From IMG/VR virus record IMGVR_UViG_3300026877_000093, positions 1 to 11,781 of that record: a stretch of 11,781 nucleotides of DNA; one strand, written 5' to 3'. The translations under genes were made by a program, and so were the position numbers. Shown piece by piece: positions 2,179-10,534 of the stretch. The notes below the pieces were generated by a model. It ran no database searches and was not told the origin of the DNA. It saw only the letters and a program-made list of their open reading frames with translations. Every line of letters begins with the position of its first letter. Position 1 is the first letter of the stretch.

Positions 2179-2192
2179 TTTATATTTTTGTT
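2179..2192 (+). promoter_or_regulatory. TATA box for a leaderless transcript of the fibre gene
   Basis: TTTATATT at -33..-26 from ATG 2212, with no RBS upstream of the ATG. Confidence 0.5.
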
Positions 2193-2211
2193 TTGCAGTA
2201 ATATAAATAAT

Positions 2212-5200
2212 ATGAGTACAATATTTGACTTAGGAGCTATTGGTACGTTTTTCTCTGATGAGATATCAGCGTTAGAAAACTTTGCAAATTGGGTAAGTTC
2301 AACATTTATAAATTTTATGAACGCAATAACCACAGATATACAAAATACATTTAGTTTTATAGGCCAAGCAATTAGCGATATACCTACTTTTATGCAAAAT
2401 ATTGCAACTGATTTTCTCACAATTTTACAAAATTTTGTCCAAACTGCGATACCAATTATACAAGGTTTTTTAAGTTGGCTTGAACAACAAATTGTAAACG
2501 CTTTTCAAGTTTTATCATCAATCGCTTCACAATTTATAAATGATGCTTATGGTTTTTTTCAAAACATTGCAAATGTGTTTTCGCAAATAATTGCAACAGT
2601 TGTGCAAGACTTTTTATCCGGCTTTGGTTCAAATATGTTGCGCATAGCGCCGGCAATTTCACAAATTGTACAATTTTTAACTCCTTTTATAGCTCCGATA
2701 ACAATTGGCAAATTTTTACCTGCAATTTCAGAAAAATTAGCTGAAATTTTACCTGAAATTGAAATTTCTTTGGCACCAATTGGTTTAGGTGGTAGAATCC
2801 CAATAAAATTTGGAGAAATTATAAAAGCTTTTGCAGAATCTGGAGTTGATTTTTTAAATGAAGTTAGACAAGAAATACAAGTTACTCTTAAGGAATTTTT
2901 AAAAGAACCTTTTGTTGCAGATTTTAAAATAACTGCAAGAGAAATATTTAATAACATAGGTCTTGGAGATTTACCGTTTGCTGATCCACCATTTCGAGAA
3001 ATTGCGAAATGGGTAGCTGTTAGGTCATTTTCCGAAATTCAAGACCATTTAAGTGAAACAATTTTATTAACTGGTTTCCCCGCTTGGTTTACTAACGCTT
3101 ATTTAACACCTCCGGCTAATGATTTTGTACCTTTAAACCCTATATTTAAACCCGTCTCAATTCGTGATGTTATTTTAGGTGCACAATTCGGAATTTTGAA
3201 TTTTGACGCTGTTTCACAATATTCATATAATAATTTAATAACTCCAAGAACTGCACAATTAATGTATAAAAATGAGACGGCACGTTTATTGCAAAAAGCA
3301 GTTGAAGAAGGCATTAGACAATTTGTAGTAACACCTTCGCAAGCTTATGAAGAAATTATTAAAAATATTAATTTAGCCGGCAAAGACCTATTTTTAAAAG
3401 TTTTTGACCTTGAATACCAATACGCAACACAAAGACTTATAAGGCAATTTTTAAGATCACTTTTAAGTAGGGCATTAACAAATTTTGGAAGGCCTTACAT
3501 TGATTTAAAGTTTTTACAAACAACAATACAAACTTTATTTAAAAGTTTAGGCTATCCAACACAGGTAGAACAAGTTTTTAATATCATGATTGAAGAATCG
3601 CAAATTGTTTATACTAACCAATTGTTATTAACGCAATTACAACAAATTGTGAGATTGGGGATATTTAATGAAAAAGAAATAAAATCAGAATTAAAAGCTA
3701 ATAATTTTAATGAAAATGTAGCACTAGCAATTTTACAAGGAGAGCTTAAATACATACAATTACAACATTTGCTAAAAGAATTTCAGTTTAAATTACAAAA
3801 TTATATTATAAGTAGTAGAGACGCAGAAAAAGGATTAAAAAGCTTAGGTTTCGATAATTCAATAATTTCTGAGACAATTTTTGAGTACCAAACTGCACCA
3901 CTTATAAAATATCAAATTTCGCAAATTGAAAGTTTAGCCAGAAAAGGGTATTTAAGTGTTGACGAAATTAAAAAAGAGCTAAATGCAATAGGTGTTATAA
4001 AAGAGTTTGAAGATGTGTTTTTAAATTACCTAAACCAAGAAATTGCCATATCTTCAACTTTAAATATACTAAGACAACAATTAAGAAGCTTTTTAGTTGA
4101 TCCCAAATTTGTGGAAACAGAATTAAGAAAATTAAAAGTAAATGATTATTTGGTAAATGAAATAATACAAGAAGAATATAATATAAACATTGCAAAACTC
4201 CAATTTTCATTAATTGAAAGTATTGCAAAAGTTCTTTATTTCGACCAACAACAATTAAATACAGAACTAGGAAAAATTGTAAAAGATAAAACTGCAATTG
4301 ACATTTATACACAAAAGTTTTATTTTGAATACATATATCCAAAAATTATAAGTTATTATACACAGTTGGCAAGACACGGCATTTCTGCAAATATTTCAAA
4401 ATTACCGAAAGATATTGTAGAATATGAAATTAAACCGGCAATTCAAGTTTTTCAATTAACAACAGAATTAGAATATATAAAAACATTATTAAAAGATTTA
4501 CAAATAACTCCAACTTCTGCAATAAATAGACTTGAAAATTTAGGTATGCAAAAAGATTTAGCTAATTTATTTGTACAAACTTACATACCCACATTTTACA
4601 GTTTACACACAATTATTAGTAATATAGTACAAGGAGAACTTTTCAAAGTTGGTAAAATACCAGTAAACTTAGGTAATGCCGAAAATGAATTAAGAAAATT
4701 AGGAATTCCAGATAATCAAATAAAAGTGTTGTTGGAACAATACGCTTCAACATTTGGTTTGGAAATTTGGAGAAAATATTTACCTTCACTTTCTAACATT
4801 GAAAATGCAATCAAATATAATTATCCGCTTAATCAACTTGTTGAATATTCGTTTATACCATCAGAACTGTTAAATTTACACGTTAATTTATTTCAACAAA
4901 TTTTTATAGGAGAATATGTACAATCTCTTAAAAATGAATATATCCAACTTTTAGTTTACGGCGTGCAAAATACACAGCTAGAAAGTTTATTAAAGCAATA
5001 TGGTATTAATGACGTTTTATTAGGTATTTACAAATTATCAGCACAAATTAGAAAATTATTAATGGCTTACCAAGAACTTTACATTACACCTTCAAAAGCT
5101 TTAACAATAAGTGAATATGTATCAAATCCAACACAGTTATTGCAAAAAGTATTTAGTGAATTTCAAGTTCCTAGTGATTTACAAAATACTTATCTCGAGT

Positions 5201-5388
5201 ATGCAATAAATAGAAGAGTTAGAACTTACATAAACGAAATAATCTCGACAATCAGTTTATTATTTGAAAAACAGAAAATTGACTTGAATACTGCACAATC
5301 ATACTTACAACAACTCAAGAAATATGGTTTGACTGATGAAGAAGTACAATTAATAATATTAAATTGGCAATTACGCTCAGCTTACTAA
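2212..5388 (+). CDS. Large minor virion protein / terminal fibre protein (SIRV2 ORF1070, gp38-like), 1058 aa
   Basis: ATG at 2212 preferred over TTG at 2188. Largest ORF, helical with 11-aa and 48-aa periodicities. Size and synteny match the rudiviral fibre protein. Confidence 0.88.
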   Translation: MSTIFDLGAIGTFFSDEISALENFANWVSSTFINFMNAITTDIQNTFSFIGQAISDIPTFMQNIATDFLTILQNFVQTAIPIIQGFLSWLEQQIVNAFQVLSSIASQFINDAYGFFQNIANVFSQIIATVVQDFLSGFGSNMLRIAPAISQIVQFLTPFIAPITIGKFLPAISEKLAEILPEIEISLAPIGLGGRIPIKFGEIIKAFAESGVDFLNEVRQEIQVTLKEFLKEPFVADFKITAREIFNNIGLGDLPFADPPFREIAKWVAVRSFSEIQDHLSETILLTGFPAWFTNAYLTPPANDFVPLNPIFKPVSIRDVILGAQFGILNFDAVSQYSYNNLITPRTAQLMYKNETARLLQKAVEEGIRQFVVTPSQAYEEIIKNINLAGKDLFLKVFDLEYQYATQRLIRQFLRSLLSRALTNFGRPYIDLKFLQTTIQTLFKSLGYPTQVEQVFNIMIEESQIVYTNQLLLTQLQQIVRLGIFNEKEIKSELKANNFNENVALAILQGELKYIQLQHLLKEFQFKLQNYIISSRDAEKGLKSLGFDNSIISETIFEYQTAPLIKYQISQIESLARKGYLSVDEIKKELNAIGVIKEFEDVFLNYLNQEIAISSTLNILRQQLRSFLVDPKFVETELRKLKVNDYLVNEIIQEEYNINIAKLQFSLIESIAKVLYFDQQQLNTELGKIVKDKTAIDIYTQKFYFEYIYPKIISYYTQLARHGISANISKLPKDIVEYEIKPAIQVFQLTTELEYIKTLLKDLQITPTSAINRLENLGMQKDLANLFVQTYIPTFYSLHTIISNIVQGELFKVGKIPVNLGNAENELRKLGIPDNQIKVLLEQYASTFGLEIWRKYLPSLSNIENAIKYNYPLNQLVEYSFIPSELLNLHVNLFQQIFIGEYVQSLKNEYIQLLVYGVQNTQLESLLKQYGINDVLLGIYKLSAQIRKLLMAYQELYITPSKALTISEYVSNPTQLLQKVFSEFQVPSDLQNTYLEYAINRRVRTYINEIISTISLLFEKQKIDLNTAQSYLQQLKKYGLTDEEVQLIILNWQLRSAY

Positions 5389-5422
5389 ATAAATATGAAA
5401 AGGAAGACAACAGTACTGTGCT

Positions 5423-5485
5423 ATATACATAATATTATAAATGAGGTGAGTACAGTTTTTTACGTCAACTCACATAATATAACAT
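5423..5485 (+). promoter_or_regulatory. Promoter region of ORF530-ORF316: upstream element ATATACATAATAT, T-rich box and GTC
   Basis: TTTTTTAC-GTC with G at -22. The 13-bp element at -63..-51 recurs at the same offset upstream of ORF269. Confidence 0.65.
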
Positions 5486-7078
5486 ATGGCTTTACCATAC
5501 ACTGTTAATTATAAATTGCCCTTAGAATATTTAACTTTGCAAGAGTGGAATAACTTCATACAAAATTTATTATTTTTAAATCAATATGGCTCAGCTCAAT
5601 TGTTACAATATTTCCAAAACGGTAGTTTTCAAAATTTAAATGAAGTAATTGCAAAGTATTTAAGTGTTGCAAGTTTGAAAATAAACGGTTATAACGCTTT
5701 ACATAACTTGTCAGAACCACAAGCGTATACTTTTGGCACGGGAAACCAACAACCGTTTCAAAACATGGCAAACAGACCGTTTTTTGGATTAGAAACTATA
5801 ACACCGCCAACTCTAAACTTTCAAGTACAATTACAACCGTTGGCTAAACAATTGCAATTATTAATTCCAAATTTAATAAGTAAAATTACCGTACCAAACT
5901 ATGTAGCAGGCACTCAATTTCAATTTTCCGGTTCTGCGACTGTACAAAATTTAATACAAAATTATTTTGACCCTTCATATTTACAAACTTGGAGAGAAAT
6001 AATAATTCAAAATTTAGGCAATAACGCAGTGCAAATAAACAATGCAATATATTTAATGCCTAAACAATGTTTAAAAATAACTGCGAGTTCTCCATCAGAA
6101 ATACAATTAACTGCACAAAGTCCGACACTTTTAAGCGAAACAATTGGTTTTATTGGGACTCCAATATCTACTTATGTAATTACAATAACAAATAATCAGC
6201 CAAACCCAACACCTTCACCGTTTCAACAATTGCTAATTCTAAATTTATCAACTCTTTTATCAAGTGCAAGTCAGCTTTTAAACTTGCAATTTTGTTTAGA
6301 CCCTCAATGTAATACTCCATTATATGCTTGGATTGAACAAAATAATTTAACTAATGCTTATATTTGGGTAAAAATCCCAACTTCAATTCCAGCAAATGGT
6401 TCATTAACTATTTATATGTTTATACAAAATTCAATTCAATACCCTTACACTGGAATGGCCCCATATTTATCTTCTACATATGCACAATATGATAATGGAG
6501 GAAATGTATTTAATTTTTATGATAATTTTAAAGGGACTACATTAAACCCGGCATGGACAGTCCCTTCAGGTTTTAGTTACCAAGTAAATAACGGTTTTAT
6601 CGCTGAACCTTCCAGCGGTTCTGCTCCTTCTGCATATAATTTAAATGTTCAAGAAACATCATCGATAATAGCAGAATGGGCTTTAAATATGTCATCTACC
6701 ACATATTCTAGAAATTATACATATTTTCAGCTAAATAGGTATACAGGATACTCAAACATGCATATGTTAGGCGTATCAGGGTCTGATACACTTTTTAATA
6801 ATAATACAAAAATTAATACTGTTTCTATTTCTTCGTCAGGAATACAAATTTTTGGAGTACGGAATGGTGGGACAACAGTAACATGGTATTATGAAGGTAA
6901 TTCGTATACTAATAATTCTGTAACTGCAGAAACTGATTATCTTGCACTTGGATGGGCTTATAACGCACAAAGTTACAATTTTCCTACAATATATTGGGTT
7001 AGGACTAGAGCTTATCCTCCAAATGGAGTAATGCCTTCAAATTCTCAACCGCAACAAACTATAGTATTTGTAGGTTAA
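5486..7078 (+). CDS. Minor virion protein (SIRV2 ORF564, gp39-like) with a C-terminal DUF2341-like / lectin-like region, 530 aa
   Basis: Follows the fibre gene. From aa ~229 it has DUF2341-type motifs (ITITNNQ..PTPSPFQQ, PLYAWIE, IWVKIP.SIPANGSLTIYM, YDNG.NVF.FYDNF) and ends in WVRTRAYPPNGVMPS. Confidence 0.8.
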   Translation: MALPYTVNYKLPLEYLTLQEWNNFIQNLLFLNQYGSAQLLQYFQNGSFQNLNEVIAKYLSVASLKINGYNALHNLSEPQAYTFGTGNQQPFQNMANRPFFGLETITPPTLNFQVQLQPLAKQLQLLIPNLISKITVPNYVAGTQFQFSGSATVQNLIQNYFDPSYLQTWREIIIQNLGNNAVQINNAIYLMPKQCLKITASSPSEIQLTAQSPTLLSETIGFIGTPISTYVITITNNQPNPTPSPFQQLLILNLSTLLSSASQLLNLQFCLDPQCNTPLYAWIEQNNLTNAYIWVKIPTSIPANGSLTIYMFIQNSIQYPYTGMAPYLSSTYAQYDNGGNVFNFYDNFKGTTLNPAWTVPSGFSYQVNNGFIAEPSSGSAPSAYNLNVQETSSIIAEWALNMSSTTYSRNYTYFQLNRYTGYSNMHMLGVSGSDTLFNNNTKINTVSISSSGIQIFGVRNGGTTVTWYYEGNSYTNNSVTAETDYLALGWAYNAQSYNFPTIYWVRTRAYPPNGVMPSNSQPQQTIVFVG

Positions 7079-7085
7079 TAAAACA

Positions 7086-8036
7086 ATGACCATCGCGACT
7101 ACTACTCAATGCACTGATGTTTACCAAATTGCTAATTTGTTATCTCCACCAAGTAAATATTCAATAATTTCTTCTTCACTATGGAATGAAATTGTACAAG
7201 ATTTATATTTAACATATAGCGTATTTCAATATATTAATTTTTTATCAGCATTTCCATATACAGATTATATATTTCCTGCAATTCAACAATTTAATAATTT
7301 TCCGCAAAATTTTACGCCTTATACTTTTACCCCTTTACTTAATGCCCAAACGGGTACACCGCTTAACGCTGATGATTTTAACAACTTAATAAACGCAATT
7401 ATAGAATTAGCAAATATGGCTAATATACAATTACAAACAAAATTAAATTATGTACAACCGAACGAAATTGTTAAAGCTTCGCAATTTGCAAATGTAATTT
7501 ATGCAGTAAATCAATTATTAACTTTTAATTATAATACTTATTTTATTTTAAGTTGTTCAGGTGCCGAATTTATTAACCTACTAAGCACGCAAACTGCATT
7601 TTTAAATGTATTAATATACAACTTAAGCAATAACCTATCAGTTTCAAACAATACTTATATAAAAAATTTACTTTTAAATTCTTTGAGTCAAAACATTTAT
7701 AACTATGGAATAATTGATAAATTAGTAATTGTATCAAGTAATGGAAACATTTATCTTTATAATGATGCATTTATTAACTCTTTAACCATAAATAATAATA
7801 TTCAAAATATTTATGTAAATGATAGTTCTTCAATTGAAACATTATCAATTTCATACAATACTGGTAAAATTTACCTTAATGGAAATGCATTTATTAATAC
7901 TTTAACCATAAATACCCAAAATGGTTATATTTATGTAAATGATAATTCCGTAATAAATAATTTAATTTGTAATACAAATGTAGGAGCAGTTATTATAGCA
8001 CCTACTGCAGTAGTTATAAATAACCAGTGCACTTAA
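7086..8036 (+). CDS. Conserved rudiviral protein (SIRV2 ORF309-like) with C-terminal 20-aa beta-solenoid-type repeats, 316 aa
   Basis: Starts 7 nt after the ORF530 stop. Asn/Ile-rich repeats of the form IY(L/V)NxxxxIxxLxIxxxxG. Confidence 0.75.
   Translation: MTIATTTQCTDVYQIANLLSPPSKYSIISSSLWNEIVQDLYLTYSVFQYINFLSAFPYTDYIFPAIQQFNNFPQNFTPYTFTPLLNAQTGTPLNADDFNNLINAIIELANMANIQLQTKLNYVQPNEIVKASQFANVIYAVNQLLTFNYNTYFILSCSGAEFINLLSTQTAFLNVLIYNLSNNLSVSNNTYIKNLLLNSLSQNIYNYGIIDKLVIVSSNGNIYLYNDAFINSLTINNNIQNIYVNDSSSIETLSISYNTGKIYLNGNAFINTLTINTQNGYIYVNDNSVINNLICNTNVGAVIIAPTAVVINNQCT
7741..7980 (+). repeat. Imperfect intragenic tandem repeat, 4 x 60 bp arranged as 2 x 120 bp
   Basis: ATGCATTTATTAA..CTTTAACCATAAATA is shared by the units at 7741 and 7861. 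ATATTTATGTAAATGATA is shared by the units at 7801 and 7921. Confidence 0.8.
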
Positions 8037-8513
8037 TTATAATTTACAAAATACAAATTCTCTATTATCATCAGTTATGAAAGTCAAAATTGTACCGTAA
8101 AGTTTTTTCATCAATTCAAATCTATTCTCAGTCCAGTCATGAATAGCAATACAATATTGTTTATATTTCTGCAATTCTTCAAATCTCAAATTTTTTTCAC
8201 ATCCTTCACAATCCATAATAAAAATGTCAGTATTCGGATACTCTTTACCAGTCCATTCCCCATTTATCTCAACTTTTTCACAAATTTGAAATTCTTTGCA
8301 AACTTTTTCTTTAAACCTCTTGTTTAACTCACCACTTTTTTCAAAACCAATTACTTTTTTAGCGTCTTTCAAAAGAAAATACAAAGCAGAACTTCCGCAA
8401 TCATTTCCAATTATTGTAATTGTTTTATCTTTAACATCTAATTTTCCATATGCTAAATTAAATTCATACCAATAACAACATCCTAATTTACAAAAATAAT
8501 CGTTATAATTCAT
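8037..8513 (-). CDS. SAM-dependent methyltransferase, FkbM-like (SIRV2 ORF158b-like), 158 aa
   Basis: Motif I-like TITIIGNDCGSSALYF, then AKKVIGFE (acidic end of beta-2) and FIMDCEGCE (FkbM K.D.EG.E-type). Size and synteny match. Confidence 0.85.
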   Translation of the reverse strand: MNYNDYFCKLGCCYWYEFNLAYGKLDVKDKTITIIGNDCGSSALYFLLKDAKKVIGFEKSGELNKRFKEKVCKEFQICEKVEINGEWTGKEYPNTDIFIMDCEGCEKNLRFEELQKYKQYCIAIHDWTENRFELMKKLYGTILTFITDDNREFVFCKL

Positions 8514-9319
8514 GAACTTATTACCTCAAACAAAGCGTAAACTGTAGTAGGGCCTGTGGCCCAAGCGTAAACGTTTGCCGGGTTATTTACATGTATCTCT
8601 AAACTATCATTTGGCAAAATCGGAAAGTTATTATAAATGTTGTTACCAATGTAAACTATATAATTACTTAAGTTTTGTAAAATTATTCTTGCAGTTTGCA
8701 ATGCCGAACCGGAATAAAGCGGGTTAGGTGTAGTACCAACATTAAGTTGTAAACCTTGTATAGTAGGAGGTGCTAAATATAACGTAAGCTGGTTTATTGT
8801 ATTTGCCAAACCGACAGTTGCTAAATAAATATAAAAAAGTGAATAAGCTAAATAATTAGAAACAGCATAAACTGCATTTTGCAAAGGAATTCCTAATTGT
8901 TGAGATACAGAATTTATTAAATTGTAAAATGACGCATAAAAATTTTGTAAATCTTGTTGTACTACGTTTGAAATTTCTTGCGGTAAATTAACAAGCGAAT
9001 TATAAAGTTGTTCATTACTGTACAAAATTGCGTTTATTTGGTCATTAGCAGTTGAAATAAAACCAGCAATATAAATAGGATCAAGTTCAGTTATTACAGG
9101 CTGGCCAGCAACATAAACATCATTATAAAAATAACCGGCATCGGCAATTATCCAATTCGGGATTACCAAATTCCCATTTTGGAGAATTGATGTTACTGCA
9201 TTTCCGCCGGTTTGATATAATTGGTTTAATAACAAAACGGCAGTATTCCACATACTTGATGTCAAACGCTGGAATGGTGAAGCCAACAAATCCGAAATTG
9301 ATGTATAAGTTACACTCAC
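8510..9319 (-). CDS. Conserved rudiviral protein (SIRV2 ORF269-like), 269 aa from a GTG start; probable paralogue of the ORF530 N-terminal part
   Basis: GTG at 9319 gives 269 aa (MSVTYTSISDLLASPFQRLTSSMWN...). The extension to 9364 in the ORF track runs through the promoter. Its stop overlaps the methyltransferase start (ATGA). Confidence 0.8.
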   Translation of the reverse strand: MSVTYTSISDLLASPFQRLTSSMWNTAVLLLNQLYQTGGNAVTSILQNGNLVIPNWIIADAGYFYNDVYVAGQPVITELDPIYIAGFISTANDQINAILYSNEQLYNSLVNLPQEISNVVQQDLQNFYASFYNLINSVSQQLGIPLQNAVYAVSNYLAYSLFYIYLATVGLANTINQLTLYLAPPTIQGLQLNVGTTPNPLYSGSALQTARIILQNLSNYIVYIGNNIYNNFPILPNDSLEIHVNNPANVYAWATGPTTVYALFEVISS

Positions 9320-9389
9320 AATTATTATTTTCTTACTTGGCAAAAATAAACATGCACAGCACATATATTATATTATGTATATGTGCTGT
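9320..9389 (-). promoter_or_regulatory. Promoter region of ORF269-methyltransferase, including a 12-bp inverted repeat
   Basis: TTTATTTTT-GCC with G at -22, ATATACATAATAT at -63..-51, and inverted repeat ACAGCACATATA (9356-9367) / TATATGTGCTGT (9378-9389). Confidence 0.65.
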
Positions 9390-9420
9390 AACACTTGTTG
9401 TAAATTAGTCCCGTAAAAAT

Positions 9421-9463: not shown

Positions 9464-10534
9464 ATGAGTAAAACAATTTATTATGTACATCCTATGCACC
9501 ACGATGTTTCATTTAAATTTGTAGCAAAAGAACATATAAAAATGTTAAAAGAAAAATATACAGTTTATGAAATACCAATTTTATCTTTTTACCAATTTAC
9601 ACCTTTTAAATTTCCAATTTCCATAATTCATCCATTTTTTTACAGTATGTGGTATTGGGGAAAAATTGAATTTTCATTCTTTGAAACTTACAGAACTAAA
9701 GTAAGTGCCGTTTTAGGTGTAGAAGTTGCAGATACTAATAAAATTGCCGAAAAATACATCAATTATGCAAATAATTACGCCGATGCAATAATATTAAATT
9801 CGCAGTGGTCAATTAACGCATTTATAAACTCCGGCTTAAAAATACCAGCTTATAAAGTCGTACATAATTTTAACCCAAAATTATTAGCAAATGATAAAGA
9901 ATTAGAAATAGATAAACACGTTTCTTATATTGAAAAAATAAAAAATGAAAAGAAAATCAAATTAATATTTATTTCATTATGGCACTCGGATTTTAGAAAA
10001 GGAACCGATATTTTTCATGAAATAGCAAAAAAACTACAAAAAGAAAGAGATGATATTTACTTTTTAGTTAAAAGCGGTATGCCAAAAAATGATTTTAATG
10101 ATTTAAAAATGTTTAATGTAACAGGAGTAGTAAGTTTTGATAATATAGTTAAAATGTACAGAATTTCGGATTTATATTTATTAACTTCAAGAGGCGGGAG
10201 TTTTGAATTAAACGGTTTAGAAGCGTTTATTTCAAAAATTCCCGCAATTGCGACAAAAGGCGGGGCGTGGGAAGAATATTACCCATCTCAATTAAAAGAT
10301 TTACTAGTTGATCCTTGCAATTCTCCAACAGTTTTGCCGGGTAACCCAATACATGTAGGCCAGGGCGTGGAAATGTGTATTGATAAAGCAGTAAACAAAA
10401 TTTTGAAAGTTTTAGATAATTATGATAATTACAAAGCTAAAATTGAAGAAAATCATAGTTTTTGGCTAGAAAATTTTAGTTACCAAAATGTGAAAAAACA
10501 ACTAATAAATGTAGTTGAGAAATACATAAAATAA
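9464..10534 (+). CDS. GT-B fold glycosyltransferase (GT4 / Glycos_transf_1-like; SIRV2 ORF356-like), 356 aa
   Basis: Motifs ADAIILNSQWS, RKGTD, MYRISDLYLLTSRGGSFELNGLEA and PAIATKGGAWEEY. Same length as SIRV ORF356. Confidence 0.92.
   Translation: MSKTIYYVHPMHHDVSFKFVAKEHIKMLKEKYTVYEIPILSFYQFTPFKFPISIIHPFFYSMWYWGKIEFSFFETYRTKVSAVLGVEVADTNKIAEKYINYANNYADAIILNSQWSINAFINSGLKIPAYKVVHNFNPKLLANDKELEIDKHVSYIEKIKNEKKIKLIFISLWHSDFRKGTDIFHEIAKKLQKERDDIYFLVKSGMPKNDFNDLKMFNVTGVVSFDNIVKMYRISDLYLLTSRGGSFELNGLEAFISKIPAIATKGGAWEEYYPSQLKDLLVDPCNSPTVLPGNPIHVGQGVEMCIDKAVNKILKVLDNYDNYKAKIEENHSFWLENFSYQNVKKQLINVVEKYIK

What the first reader, a model, noticed from the sequence alone, without database searches (positions are those of the whole stretch)
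5486..9319. ORF269 appears to be a hidden paralogue of the ORF530 N-terminal module: an inverted-duplication fibre/adhesin cassette
Collinear matches (ORF530 vs ORF269): PLEYLTLQEWNNFIQNLLFLNQYG vs PFQRLTSSMWNTAVLLLNQLYQTG; YFQNGSFQNLNEVIA vs ILQNGNLVIPNWIIA; ITVPNYVAGTQF vs LAPPTIQGLQL; EIIIQNLGNNAVQINNAIY-LMPKQCLKITASSPSEIQLTAQSPT vs RIILQNLSNYIVYIGNNIYNNFPILPNDSLEIHVNNPANVYAWATGPT. ORF269 ends about where the DUF2341-like region of ORF530 begins. Inference: one ancestral gene duplicated with its promoter, and one copy gained a receptor-binding domain. The pair, with ORF316, may form a hetero-oligomeric virion-tip adhesin in which only some chains carry a head. I am not aware of this being described.
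Basis: partly seen in the sequence, partly recalled or inferred. Interest (0 to 1): 0.78.

Follow-up and report, generated by a model that had tools for sequence, protein, structure and literature searches.

The report
Headless twin of rudivirus tip protein
In this rod-shaped archaeal virus a small conserved gene of unknown function (ORF269) is an ancient, head-less copy of the front part of a known minor virion protein (ORF530, the SIRV2 P564 family), and the spacer lengths of the two proteins change together across viruses, which suggests that they are built into the same structure at the virion tip.

Summary
The window is a rudivirus (SIRV-like) contig carrying the conserved block ORF1066 (terminal-fibre protein family), ORF530 (P564 family), ORF316, a methyltransferase, ORF269 and a glycosyltransferase.

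**Observation: confirmed, in the twilight zone.**
- ORF269 aligns collinearly with ORF530 residues 11-222.
- BLASTP for the pair gives E 1e-4. Profile-profile E ranges from 2e-8 to 1e-3, depending on the alignments used.
- Two domains hit separately and in the right order: the N-terminal domain and a beta-domain.
- Shuffle controls, negative-control families and reciprocal Foldseek hits all agree.

**Interpretation: partly supported.**
- The duplication predates all known Rudiviridae.
- The convergent ("inverted") arrangement is specific to SIRV-type viruses. The two genes are tandem in SRV and SBRV1 and 3-4 kb apart elsewhere.
- The shared promoter is real. It is a regulon element also found upstream of the capsid gene and ORF399, and it fits the published Sta1 site. 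It is not a relic of the duplication.

**New evidence.**
- The variable linkers of the two proteins co-vary: 94 with 56 residues, or 134 with 76. They are concordant in 21 of 21 SIRV-type genomes, although the flanking domains do not cluster by length class.
- ORF530 carries a recombinationally swapped head cassette (residues 357-502). ORF269 has none.

**Best reading.** ORF269 is a length-matched, head-less partner of ORF530 in the virion terminal complex. This is inferred, not shown.

The parts
5400..5485 (+). ORF530 promoter and 5' region. The core element ATATACATAATAT lies at 5423-5435. The 17-mer at 5427-5443 ends 43 nt before the ATG.
   Evidence: It aligns without gaps, anchored at the start codon, with the ORF269 upstream region: 58% identity, against a mean of 31% and a maximum of 45% for other gene pairs. 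It fits the published Sta1 consensus ATNT-N8-(A/T)NAT (PMC1635249).
5486..5752 (+). ORF530 N-terminal domain (aa 1-89), containing the W-N helix motif. It is homologous to ORF269 aa 14-79.
   Evidence: regex specificity
5753..5890 (+). ORF530 variable linker (aa 90-135). This is the short class: 56 residues between the TF and AG anchors.
   Evidence: Mean identity across ten viruses is 27%. Its length co-varies with the ORF269 linker.
5891..6151 (+). ORF530 beta-domain (aa 136-222), homologous to the ORF269 C-terminal domain.
   Evidence: hhalign E 1.2e-5. AF2 pLDDT is 62-80 and the strand order matches that of ORF269.
6152..6553 (+). ORF530 conserved DUF2341-containing domain (aa 223-356).
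   Evidence: Pfam PF10102 E 3.7e-9 at aa 271-358. AF2 pLDDT 80-93. BFVD hits to structural proteins of SPV2, SEV1 and TTV1.
6554..6991 (+). ORF530 hypervariable head cassette (aa 357-502).
   Evidence: P0173 is 100% identical over aa 1-283, unrelated over 357-502 and 82% identical over the last 28 aa. Many homologues cover only about 67% of the query. Mean identity is 27%.
6992..7078 (+). ORF530 conserved C-terminal tail (aa 503-530) plus the stop codon.
7086..8036 (+). ORF316 (SIRV2 ORF309 family). It has a W-N motif at aa 29-41 and a repeat-rich C-terminal half.
   Evidence: Family membership. The motif is shared only with the 564 and 269 families. hhalign aligns only the motif.
8037..8513 (-). 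ORF158, a SAM-dependent methyltransferase homologue. It overlaps the ORF269 stop codon and is probably co-transcribed with ORF269.
   Evidence: SIRV2 gp41 annotation and synteny.
8513..8770 (-). ORF269 C-terminal beta-domain (aa 184-269).
   Evidence: It hits roughly 85-125-aa Caudovirales proteins in BFVD with TMt 0.5-0.8.
8771..9058 (-). ORF269 helical linker (aa 88-183). This is the short class: 94 residues between the anchors.
   Evidence: AF2 predicts helices at 81-142 and 146-182. The PDB profile hit is to designed coiled coils. Indels and co-variation.
9059..9319 (-). ORF269 N-terminal domain (aa 1-87) with the W-N helix; GTG start at 9317-9319.
   Evidence: The N-terminus is conserved in all homologues. 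The start-anchored promoter alignment supports this start.
9320..9405 (-). ORF269 promoter and 5' region. The core element lies at 9370-9382 on the minus strand. The 17-mer at 9362-9378 ends 43 nt before the GTG. It is embedded in a 10-bp perfect palindrome.

Best explanation
ORF269 (SIRV2 gp42 family) and the first ~222 residues of ORF530 (SIRV2 P564/gp39 family, a minor virion protein) descend from one ancestral three-part module. The parts are a conserved N-terminal domain carrying a 'W-N' helix, a variable linker, and a conserved small beta-sandwich domain.

The duplication happened before the known Rudiviridae diverged. ORF530 additionally carries a DUF2341 domain, a recombinationally exchangeable head cassette and a conserved tail, which is the layout of a host-recognition protein. 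ORF269 has no head and is conserved from end to end.

Both genes sit behind the same type of promoter as the capsid gene, so they are probably expressed together with virion proteins.

I infer that ORF269 is a head-less structural partner (strut or adaptor) of ORF530 in the terminal complex of the rod. The two linkers run side by side or span the same distance, so their lengths must match.

What is shown: the paralogy, the domain layout, the head swapping, the promoter similarity and the linker co-variation. What is inferred: virion location, physical contact and stoichiometry.

My confidence in the paralogy alone is about 0.85. My confidence in the co-assembly model is about 0.45.
For: - Homology: sequence and profiles, with shuffles and control families; matching order of strands in the beta-domain; reciprocal Foldseek hits, plus a shared set of small phage beta-domain proteins.
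- Same three-part conservation profile in both families: 0.70/0.43/0.71 and 0.57/0.27/0.48.
- Core gene in all 42 rudivirus records.
- Head cassette.
- Co-regulation. The published Sta1 footprint consensus and the use of promoters 134 and 399 come from PMC1635249.
- Co-variation across genera: linker pairs 94/56, 112/68, 125/80, 137/70, 141/76, 152/89; r = 0.92, n = 10, not independent.
- Co-variation within SIRV-type genomes: 21 of 21 carry either 90-102 with 52-56 or 134 with 76. Three pairings were confirmed on single contigs.
- Flanking domains of both genes, including those lying between the two linkers, do not cluster by length class: within-class minus between-class identity is -0.013 to +0.014.
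- The best tree needs 7 and 6 class changes, and 6 of 6 independent pairs are concordant.
- The +40 helix-prone residues in ORF269 go with +20 Pro/aromatic-rich residues in ORF564.
- The W-N motif occurs only in the 564, 269 and 309 families among 241 ORFs.
- P564 and ORF581 are described as virion structural proteins in record annotations.
Against: - The similarity is in the twilight zone and depends on the profile: E is only about 1e-3 with alignments A3/A5, and the shuffle maximum of 32.8 is close to the observed 34.4.
- HMMER is marginal.
- The ORF269 profile did not retrieve P564 proteins from 1.84 billion representatives.
- Both AF2 models are poor in the N-terminal halves: mean pLDDT 48.8 and 57.2.
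- No proteomic or other experimental report on ORF269 turned up in the searchable literature. The published lists of rudiviral structural proteins that I recall do not include it.
- The co-variation has few strongly supported independent events: only 1 pair on starred branches, and the sign test on 6 pairs gives about 0.03.
- The promoter class is shared with non-structural genes too, such as ORF399 and ORF335.
Confidence: 0.6

Rival explanations
1. ORF269 is a true paralogue but works on its own. For example, it could form a homo-oligomeric plug or fibre-base component, or an intracellular protein. The linker co-variation would then reflect shared ancestry or co-transfer, not physical contact.
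For: Each family has its own invariant residues in the N domain. Only one independent contrast lies on strongly supported branches. No interaction data exist.
Against: 21 of 21 genomes are concordant even though recombination has uncoupled both linkers from their neighbouring domains. The correlation also holds across genera.
Confidence: 0.22
2. ORF269 is a non-virion assembly factor (chaperone or scaffold) that templates folding or trimerisation of the ORF530 N-module and is then released, in the manner of a phage tail-fibre assembly protein.
For: This would explain its absence from the structural-protein lists I recall. It would also explain co-expression with virion genes and matched linker lengths.
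Against: Known fibre chaperones are usually not paralogues of the anchor part of their client (my knowledge). ORF269's own terminal domains are more conserved than those of ORF530, which fits a fixed structural contact.
Confidence: 0.12
3. The similarity is not homology. It would be convergence or shared composition in an AT-rich genome, plus coiled-coil periodicity.
For: Weak HMMER scores. The result depends on the profile used. The helical linker of ORF269 also 'hits' the ORF1070 N-terminus at E about 2e-4, which shows that periodic helices can produce such scores.
Against: The signal lies in the two non-helical domains, in the right order, while the helical middle contributes nothing. Shuffles and control families score far lower. 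Foldseek hits are reciprocal.
Confidence: 0.1
4. ORF269 is an enzyme: GenBank records OM401712-OM401714 call it a 'putative protein acetyl transferase'.
For: Only the depositors' label.
Against: There is no Pfam match at E 0.1 or below. phrog_7221 is of unknown function. The profile finds no enzyme among PDB sequences. The architecture is helix-rich plus a small beta-sandwich.
Confidence: 0.02

Closest known systems
SIRV2 P564 (gp39) / SRV ORF581 family of rudiviral minor structural proteins (phrog_7548, DUF2341-containing)
   Same: ORF530 is a full-length member. ORF269 shares its first three segments: N domain, linker and beta-domain.
   Different: ORF269 lacks DUF2341, the variable head and the conserved C-terminal tail. 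Its linker is about twice as long and helix-prone rather than Pro/aromatic-rich.
SIRV2 gp42 / ORF269 family (phrog_7221, unknown function)
   Same: The window's ORF269 is an ordinary member, 50-75% identical to homologues in all cultured rudiviruses.
   Different: No structural difference. What is new is the family's link to P564, and a wider metagenomic superfamily with alternative C-terminal domains.
Tailed-phage receptor-binding protein sets that share an N-terminal anchor or adaptor module and carry exchangeable distal heads (my knowledge: branched tailspike systems of CBA120- and G7C-like phages, and mosaic side tail fibres)
   Same: A conserved proximal module is duplicated within one genome. 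One copy carries a distal cassette exchanged by recombination between near-identical viruses.
   Different: The virion is a helical rod of realm Adnaviria with no tail. There is no sequence or Pfam relation to phage fibre families. One paralogue has no head at all. Virion location is unproven.
Sta1-responsive SIRV promoters (genes 134, 399 and 56; PMC1635249)
   Same: The upstream elements of ORF530 and ORF269 fit ATNT-N8-(A/T)NAT. In SIRV2 they resemble the promoters of ORF399 and ORF134 most closely.
   Different: Sta1 binding to these two promoters has not been tested, and the consensus is very degenerate in AT-rich DNA.

Membership tests
Rudiviral ORF269/gp42 family (phrog_7221) | Full-length similarity to SIRV2 ORF269 and its homologues | tested here: met
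   phrog_7221 E 7e-136; 50-75% identity over 99-100% of the length in 42 rudivirus records.
Rudiviral P564 family (phrog_7548) | Applied to ORF530: full-length similarity including DUF2341 and the conserved C-terminal tail | tested here: met
   phrog_7548 E 3e-194; PF10102 E 3.7e-9; alignment A2.
Rudiviral P564 family (phrog_7548) | Applied to ORF269: N-terminal W-N domain plus beta-domain, collinear with P564 residues 11-222 | tested here: met
   hhalign Prob 90-95% with representative profiles and 17-26% with A5. The two domains give E 3e-4 and 1.2e-5 separately.
Rudiviral P564 family (phrog_7548) | Applied to ORF269: DUF2341 domain, variable head and conserved C-terminal tail | tested here: not met
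   ORF269 ends at the position equivalent to P564 residue 222, and has no Pfam hit. It therefore shares a module but is not a family member.
Virion terminal-complex / receptor-binding protein set | Presence in purified virions at the rod ends | not testable with these tools
   Only record annotations call P564 homologues structural. Nothing was found for ORF269.
Virion terminal-complex / receptor-binding protein set | Distal domain under diversifying exchange | tested here: met
   Met for ORF530, where the head cassette 357-502 is swapped in P0173. Not met for ORF269, whose close relatives are 92-99% identical over the full length.
Virion terminal-complex / receptor-binding protein set | Physical association of ORF269 with ORF530 | tested here: inconclusive
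   Only indirect evidence: linker-length co-variation. No multimer prediction was available.
Sta1-type promoter regulon | Palindromic ATNT-N8-(A/T)NAT element overlapping the core promoter, and similarity to promoters 134 and 399 | tested here: met
   Sequence match and genome-wide comparison in SIRV2. Binding was not tested.
GNAT or other acetyltransferases | Recognisable acetyltransferase domain | tested here: not met
   No Pfam hit at E 0.1 or below, and no hit to PDB sequences.

The most novel reading that the evidence does not exclude
Rudivirus termini are built from a family of proteins that dock through a common W-N helix module: ORF564, ORF269 and ORF309. ORF269 would act as a head-less, length-matched strut or 'ruler' paired with the head-bearing ORF564 chain, so only some chains of each tip assembly carry a receptor-binding head. 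The linker cassettes of the two genes would be kept matched by selection even though recombination shuffles everything around them. This would be a co-adapted two-gene stalk in an archaeal filamentous virus, with no described counterpart.
Probability: 0.3. Interest if true: 0.75.

Novelty: new variant of a known kind. Interest (0 to 1): 0.55.

Why it matters
The ends of rudiviruses bind host pili and start infection, yet only the ORF1070 fibre protein has been assigned a role there.

Linking a universally conserved orphan gene (gp42/ORF269) to the P564 minor virion protein does three things:
- It gives the orphan gene a testable role.
- It defines a domain map of P564: anchor, linker, beta-domain, DUF2341, swappable head and tail.
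- It points to the head cassette as the likely host-specificity determinant.

The matched linker classes are a rare natural 'double-mutant' signal. They can be tested directly with the existing SIRV2 genome-editing tools.

The wider ORF269-like superfamily suggests that the same anchor module is reused with different distal domains in uncultured archaeal viruses.

Tried and rejected
- **Larger metagenome-rich alignments (A3 against A5).** They weakened rather than strengthened the profile match. I report the full range of E-values instead of the best one.
- **Structure route.** AF2 monomer models were poor in the N-terminal halves. Foldseek against PDB gave nothing significant for ORF530. Profile searches of PDB sequences found only designed coiled coils for ORF269 and nothing for ORF530. 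The fold of the beta-domain is therefore named only loosely, as a small cupin- or jelly-roll-like sandwich.
- **Bridging through distant ORF269-like proteins.** They are clearly related to ORF269 (99.7%) but only weakly and collinearly to P564 (E 0.004). P0141 alone against P564 aligns only at the W-N motif.
- **ORF316 as a third paralogue.** Rejected beyond the short W-N motif.
- **A DNA-level inverted duplication.** Rejected: only promoter-sized matches were found.
- **Promoter similarity as proof of a duplicated promoter.** Rejected after the SIRV2 genome-wide comparison.
- **The extra 270-aa ORF of isolate V60.** It is unrelated.
- **Genomic contexts of several distant homologues.** The contigs were too short to be informative.
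- **Literature.** Searches for ORF269, gp42 and P564 found no functional data. The SRV genome paper was not held in the library.

Full report
**What the window is.** The 11.8-kb window is low in G+C (about 29%). It is a rudivirus contig (IMG/VR UViG_3300026877_000093). At the DNA level it is about 76% identical to Yellowstone SIRV isolates. It carries the conserved central block of Rudiviridae:
- ORF1066 (2188-5388), the SIRV2 ORF1070 terminal-fibre protein family
- ORF530 (5486-7078), the SIRV2 ORF564/P564 family, with a DUF2341 match at residues 271-358
- ORF316 (7086-8036), the ORF309 family
- on the minus strand, a SAM methyltransferase (8037-8513) and ORF269 (8510-9319)
- a glycosyltransferase (9464-10534) and a B116-like gene

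ORF269 starts at a GTG at 9319. The longer 284-codon reading from the ATG at 9364 runs into a conserved promoter element. It is also not supported by the N-termini of homologues.

**Checking the observation.** BLASTP of the two window proteins gives 29.6 bits, E 1e-4, 26% identity over 248 columns.

Profiles built from one sequence per cultured virus give hhalign Prob 90-95% and E 1.7e-6 to 2.2e-8. The alignment covers 205-220 columns, from ORF269 14-266 to ORF530 11-222.

Controls for that comparison:
- The reversed profile scores 18.9.
- 150 column shuffles have mean 16.7 and maximum 26.8, against 66.0 observed.
- Block shuffles reach 35.7 at most.
- Other rudiviral families score 0.06-6% probability.

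Splitting ORF269 into three parts shows where the signal lies:
- N domain: E 3e-4 (14-79 against 11-75)
- C-terminal beta-domain: E 1.2e-5 (184-266 against 137-222)
- Helical middle: no match to P564

So there are two independent hits in the correct order.

Across ten viruses, 39 of 100 cross-family BLASTP pairs reach 25 bits, at corresponding positions. Control family pairs give 1/70 to 6/100.

The AF2 models are poor overall: mean pLDDT 48.8 and 57.2. The two beta-domains are modelled moderately well and show the same succession of strands.

Foldseek against BFVD is reciprocal. ORF269 hits SBRV1 ORF582 (E 8e-5, 291 columns). ORF530 hits a SIRV ORF269 homologue (E 8e-3, 213 columns). Both hit the same set of small Caudovirales beta-proteins.

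**Caveats on the homology.** With larger, SIRV-dominated alignments the same alignment scores only E about 1e-3, and the shuffle maximum of 32.8 comes close to the observed 34.4. HMMER alone is marginal. An exhaustive HMM search with the ORF269 profile did not reach P564 proteins. I rate true homology at about 0.85.

**Anatomy.** Both families show the same conservation profile: a conserved N domain, a variable linker and a conserved beta-domain. Mean identities are 0.70/0.43/0.71 for ORF269 and 0.57/0.27/0.48 for ORF530.

ORF530 continues with three further segments:
- a well-conserved and confidently modelled DUF2341 domain (223-356)
- a hypervariable segment (357-502)
- a conserved 28-residue tail

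A metagenomic relative (P0173) is 100% identical over residues 1-283, unrelated over 357-502 and 82% identical in the tail. Many other homologues cover only about two thirds of the query. This is the signature of a recombinationally exchanged head cassette.

The DUF2341 half resembles structural proteins of other Sulfolobales viruses (SPV2, SEV1, TTV1 TPX) in BFVD.

ORF269's close relatives are 92-99% identical along the full length, and the family varies mainly by linker indels.

**Gene order and age.** ORF269 homologues occur once in each of 42 rudivirus records. P564 and ORF309 homologues occur in all ten genomes examined. The duplication therefore predates the known family.

The convergent arrangement (564, 309, then MTase and 269 on the opposite strand) holds only for SIRV-type viruses. 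In SRV and SBRV1 the ORF269 homologue follows the P564 homologue on the same strand. In SMRV1, ARV1, ARV2, MRV1 and SSRV1 the two genes are 3-4 kb apart in various orientations. Tandem duplication followed by rearrangement is as plausible as an inverted duplication.

A distant rudivirus-like metagenomic contig (L010) has a single 461-residue protein, P0141, between its ORF1070-like gene and its ORF356-like glycosyltransferase gene. P0141 has an ORF269-like module plus an unrelated 200-residue C-terminal extension. No P564 homologue lies in the stretch fetched. Heads therefore come and go on this module, and the direction of change in rudiviruses cannot be decided.

**Promoters.** The 86-89 nt upstream of the two start codons align without gaps and in register, in the window, V60 and SIRV2. 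In each locus they are the most similar of all gene-pair upstream regions: 58%, 71% and 52%, against background maxima of 45-49%. The same holds in eight IMG/VR loci: 52-74%, against a background of 31-33% with sd 5%.

The core is a palindromic ATATACAT(A/T)ATAT element. In the window the 17-mer ends exactly 43 nt before each start codon.

Genome-wide in SIRV2, however, the ORF564 promoter is closest to that of ORF399 (38 of 40 positions) and then to ORF134, the capsid gene. The ORF269 promoter is closest to that of ORF335.

Promoters 134 and 399 are the ones on which the host activator Sta1 was purified. The element fits the published consensus ATNT-N8-(A/T)NAT (PMC1635249). The similarity therefore indicates a shared regulon with the capsid gene, not a promoter copied along with the gene.

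**New evidence for a physical link.** Linker lengths of the two families co-vary. Across genera the ORF269/P564 pairs are 94/56, 112/68, 125/80, 137/70, 141/76 and 152/89 (r = 0.92, n = 10, not independent).

Within SIRV-type viruses there are two classes. In one, ORF269 has 90-102 linker residues and P564 has 52-56. In the other, the lengths are 134 and 76.
- All 21 genomes or contigs that carry both genes are concordant. Three pairings were checked on single contigs, two of them from the same sample.
- The class is not a clade marker. On a tree of the ORF269 flanking domains the best topology needs 7 and 6 class changes. Six of six independent contrasts are concordant, though only one lies on strongly supported branches.
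- The N domains, the beta-domains and DUF2341 show no clustering by class: the within-class minus between-class identity is -0.013 to +0.014. These include the segments lying between the two linkers. The linkers themselves differ by about 0.2.

Recombination has thus uncoupled each linker from its neighbours, yet the two linkers, about 3.4 kb apart, stay matched.

The long class adds 40 helix-prone residues to ORF269 and 20 Pro/aromatic-rich residues to P564. If the first is helical and the second extended, both would add roughly 60 Å. That figure is an inference.

A short W-N motif is found, among 241 ORFs, only in the 564, 269 and 309 families.

**Most likely mechanism.**
- Shown: paralogy, domain layout, head exchange, promoter class and linker co-variation.
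- Inferred: ORF269 is made together with virion proteins and is built into the terminal complex as a head-less partner of P564. The conserved N and beta-domains would contact invariant viral partners. The linkers would lie alongside each other or span the same distance. P564 alone would present the exchangeable head to the host.

Rivals are a paralogue with an independent role, a released assembly factor, non-homologous similarity, and the 'acetyltransferase' label in GenBank, for which I found no support.

**Comparison with what is known.** PHROGs keeps the two families apart, and Pfam has no model for ORF269. None of the reviews or genome papers I could search mention a function for ORF269 or a relation to P564.

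The logic resembles tailed-phage receptor-binding protein sets that share an anchor and carry exchangeable heads (my knowledge). There is no sequence relation to them, however, and the virion is a tailless helical rod.

I class this as a new variant of a known kind. It is of moderate to good interest for archaeal virology, and directly testable in SIRV2.

Noticed in passing
window 8771-9058 (ORF269 aa ~103-175) and window 2350-2700 (ORF1066 aa ~56-170): The helical linker of ORF269 gives hhalign E about 2e-4, and HMMER E 3e-5 against SIRV2 ORF1070, with the N-terminal helical region of the terminal-fibre protein. Identity is 19%. ORF1066's N-terminus also weakly matches phage tape-measure PHROGs. 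This is probably helical periodicity, but a real coiled-coil partnership is not excluded.
   Followed up: partly
P0125-P0169; L010:8001-9386: A wider ORF269-like superfamily exists in metagenomes. Members share the N module (W-N helix, then a VQGKxVLKDGDPI-like motif) and a coiled coil, followed by either the ORF269-type beta-domain or unrelated C-terminal domains. P0141 (461 aa) sits between an ORF1070-like 1469-aa gene and an ORF356-like glycosyltransferase in a rudivirus-like 26.7-kb contig. Among cultured viruses it matches only rudiviral ORF269 genes.
   Followed up: partly
window 8513-8770 and 5891-6151: Both beta-domains hit the same uncharacterised 85-125-aa proteins of tailed phages in BFVD, with TM-score 0.5-0.8 normalised to the target. 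One of them is annotated as a virion structural protein of Microcystis phage MaMV-DC. The domain may be a widespread small virion module.
   Followed up: no
window 6554-6991: The head cassette of ORF530 is replaced in an otherwise identical metagenomic relative. P0173 is 100% identical over aa 1-283. This points to very recent recombination among co-occurring viruses.
   Followed up: yes
window 7086-8036; L002:7682-9220; L003:5469-7070; L004:4871-6442: ORF309-family proteins range from 309 to 664 aa. V60 ORF512, SRV ORF533 and SBRV1 ORF523 carry an extra ~235-aa domain ahead of the W-N motif, and MRV1 and SSRV1 have a second copy of the motif. The C-terminal half of ORF316 is made of Asn/Ile-rich repeats that suggest a beta-helix.
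   Followed up: partly
window 9355-9395: The ORF269 promoter core is embedded in a perfect 10-bp palindrome (CAGCACATAT ... ATATGTGCTG). It lies in the divergent intergenic region shared with the glycosyltransferase gene.
   Followed up: no
L003:2180-2292 and L003:7060-7170: In SRV the promoters of ORF1059 (fibre protein) and ORF581 (P564 homologue) are nearly identical over about 40 nt. This is another case of promoter sharing among terminal-protein genes.
   Followed up: no
window 8510-9364: Metagenome gene callers (P0001-P0008, 284 aa) start ORF269 at the ATG at 9364, which lies inside the promoter element. The conserved start is the GTG at 9319. Separately, GenBank records OM401712-14 label the homologue 'putative protein acetyl transferase' with no detectable support.
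   Followed up: yes
L053 (SIRV2 genome) 917, 8644, 8737, 13988, 17343, 23737, 27779, 30560, 34534: The exact 13-mer ATATACAT(A/T)ATAT occurs nine times in SIRV2. Five copies lie 63-72 nt upstream of the start codons of ORF399, ORF134, ORF110, ORF564 and ORF269, and two lie in the terminal repeats. This gives a candidate regulon list for the host activator Sta1.
   Followed up: partly
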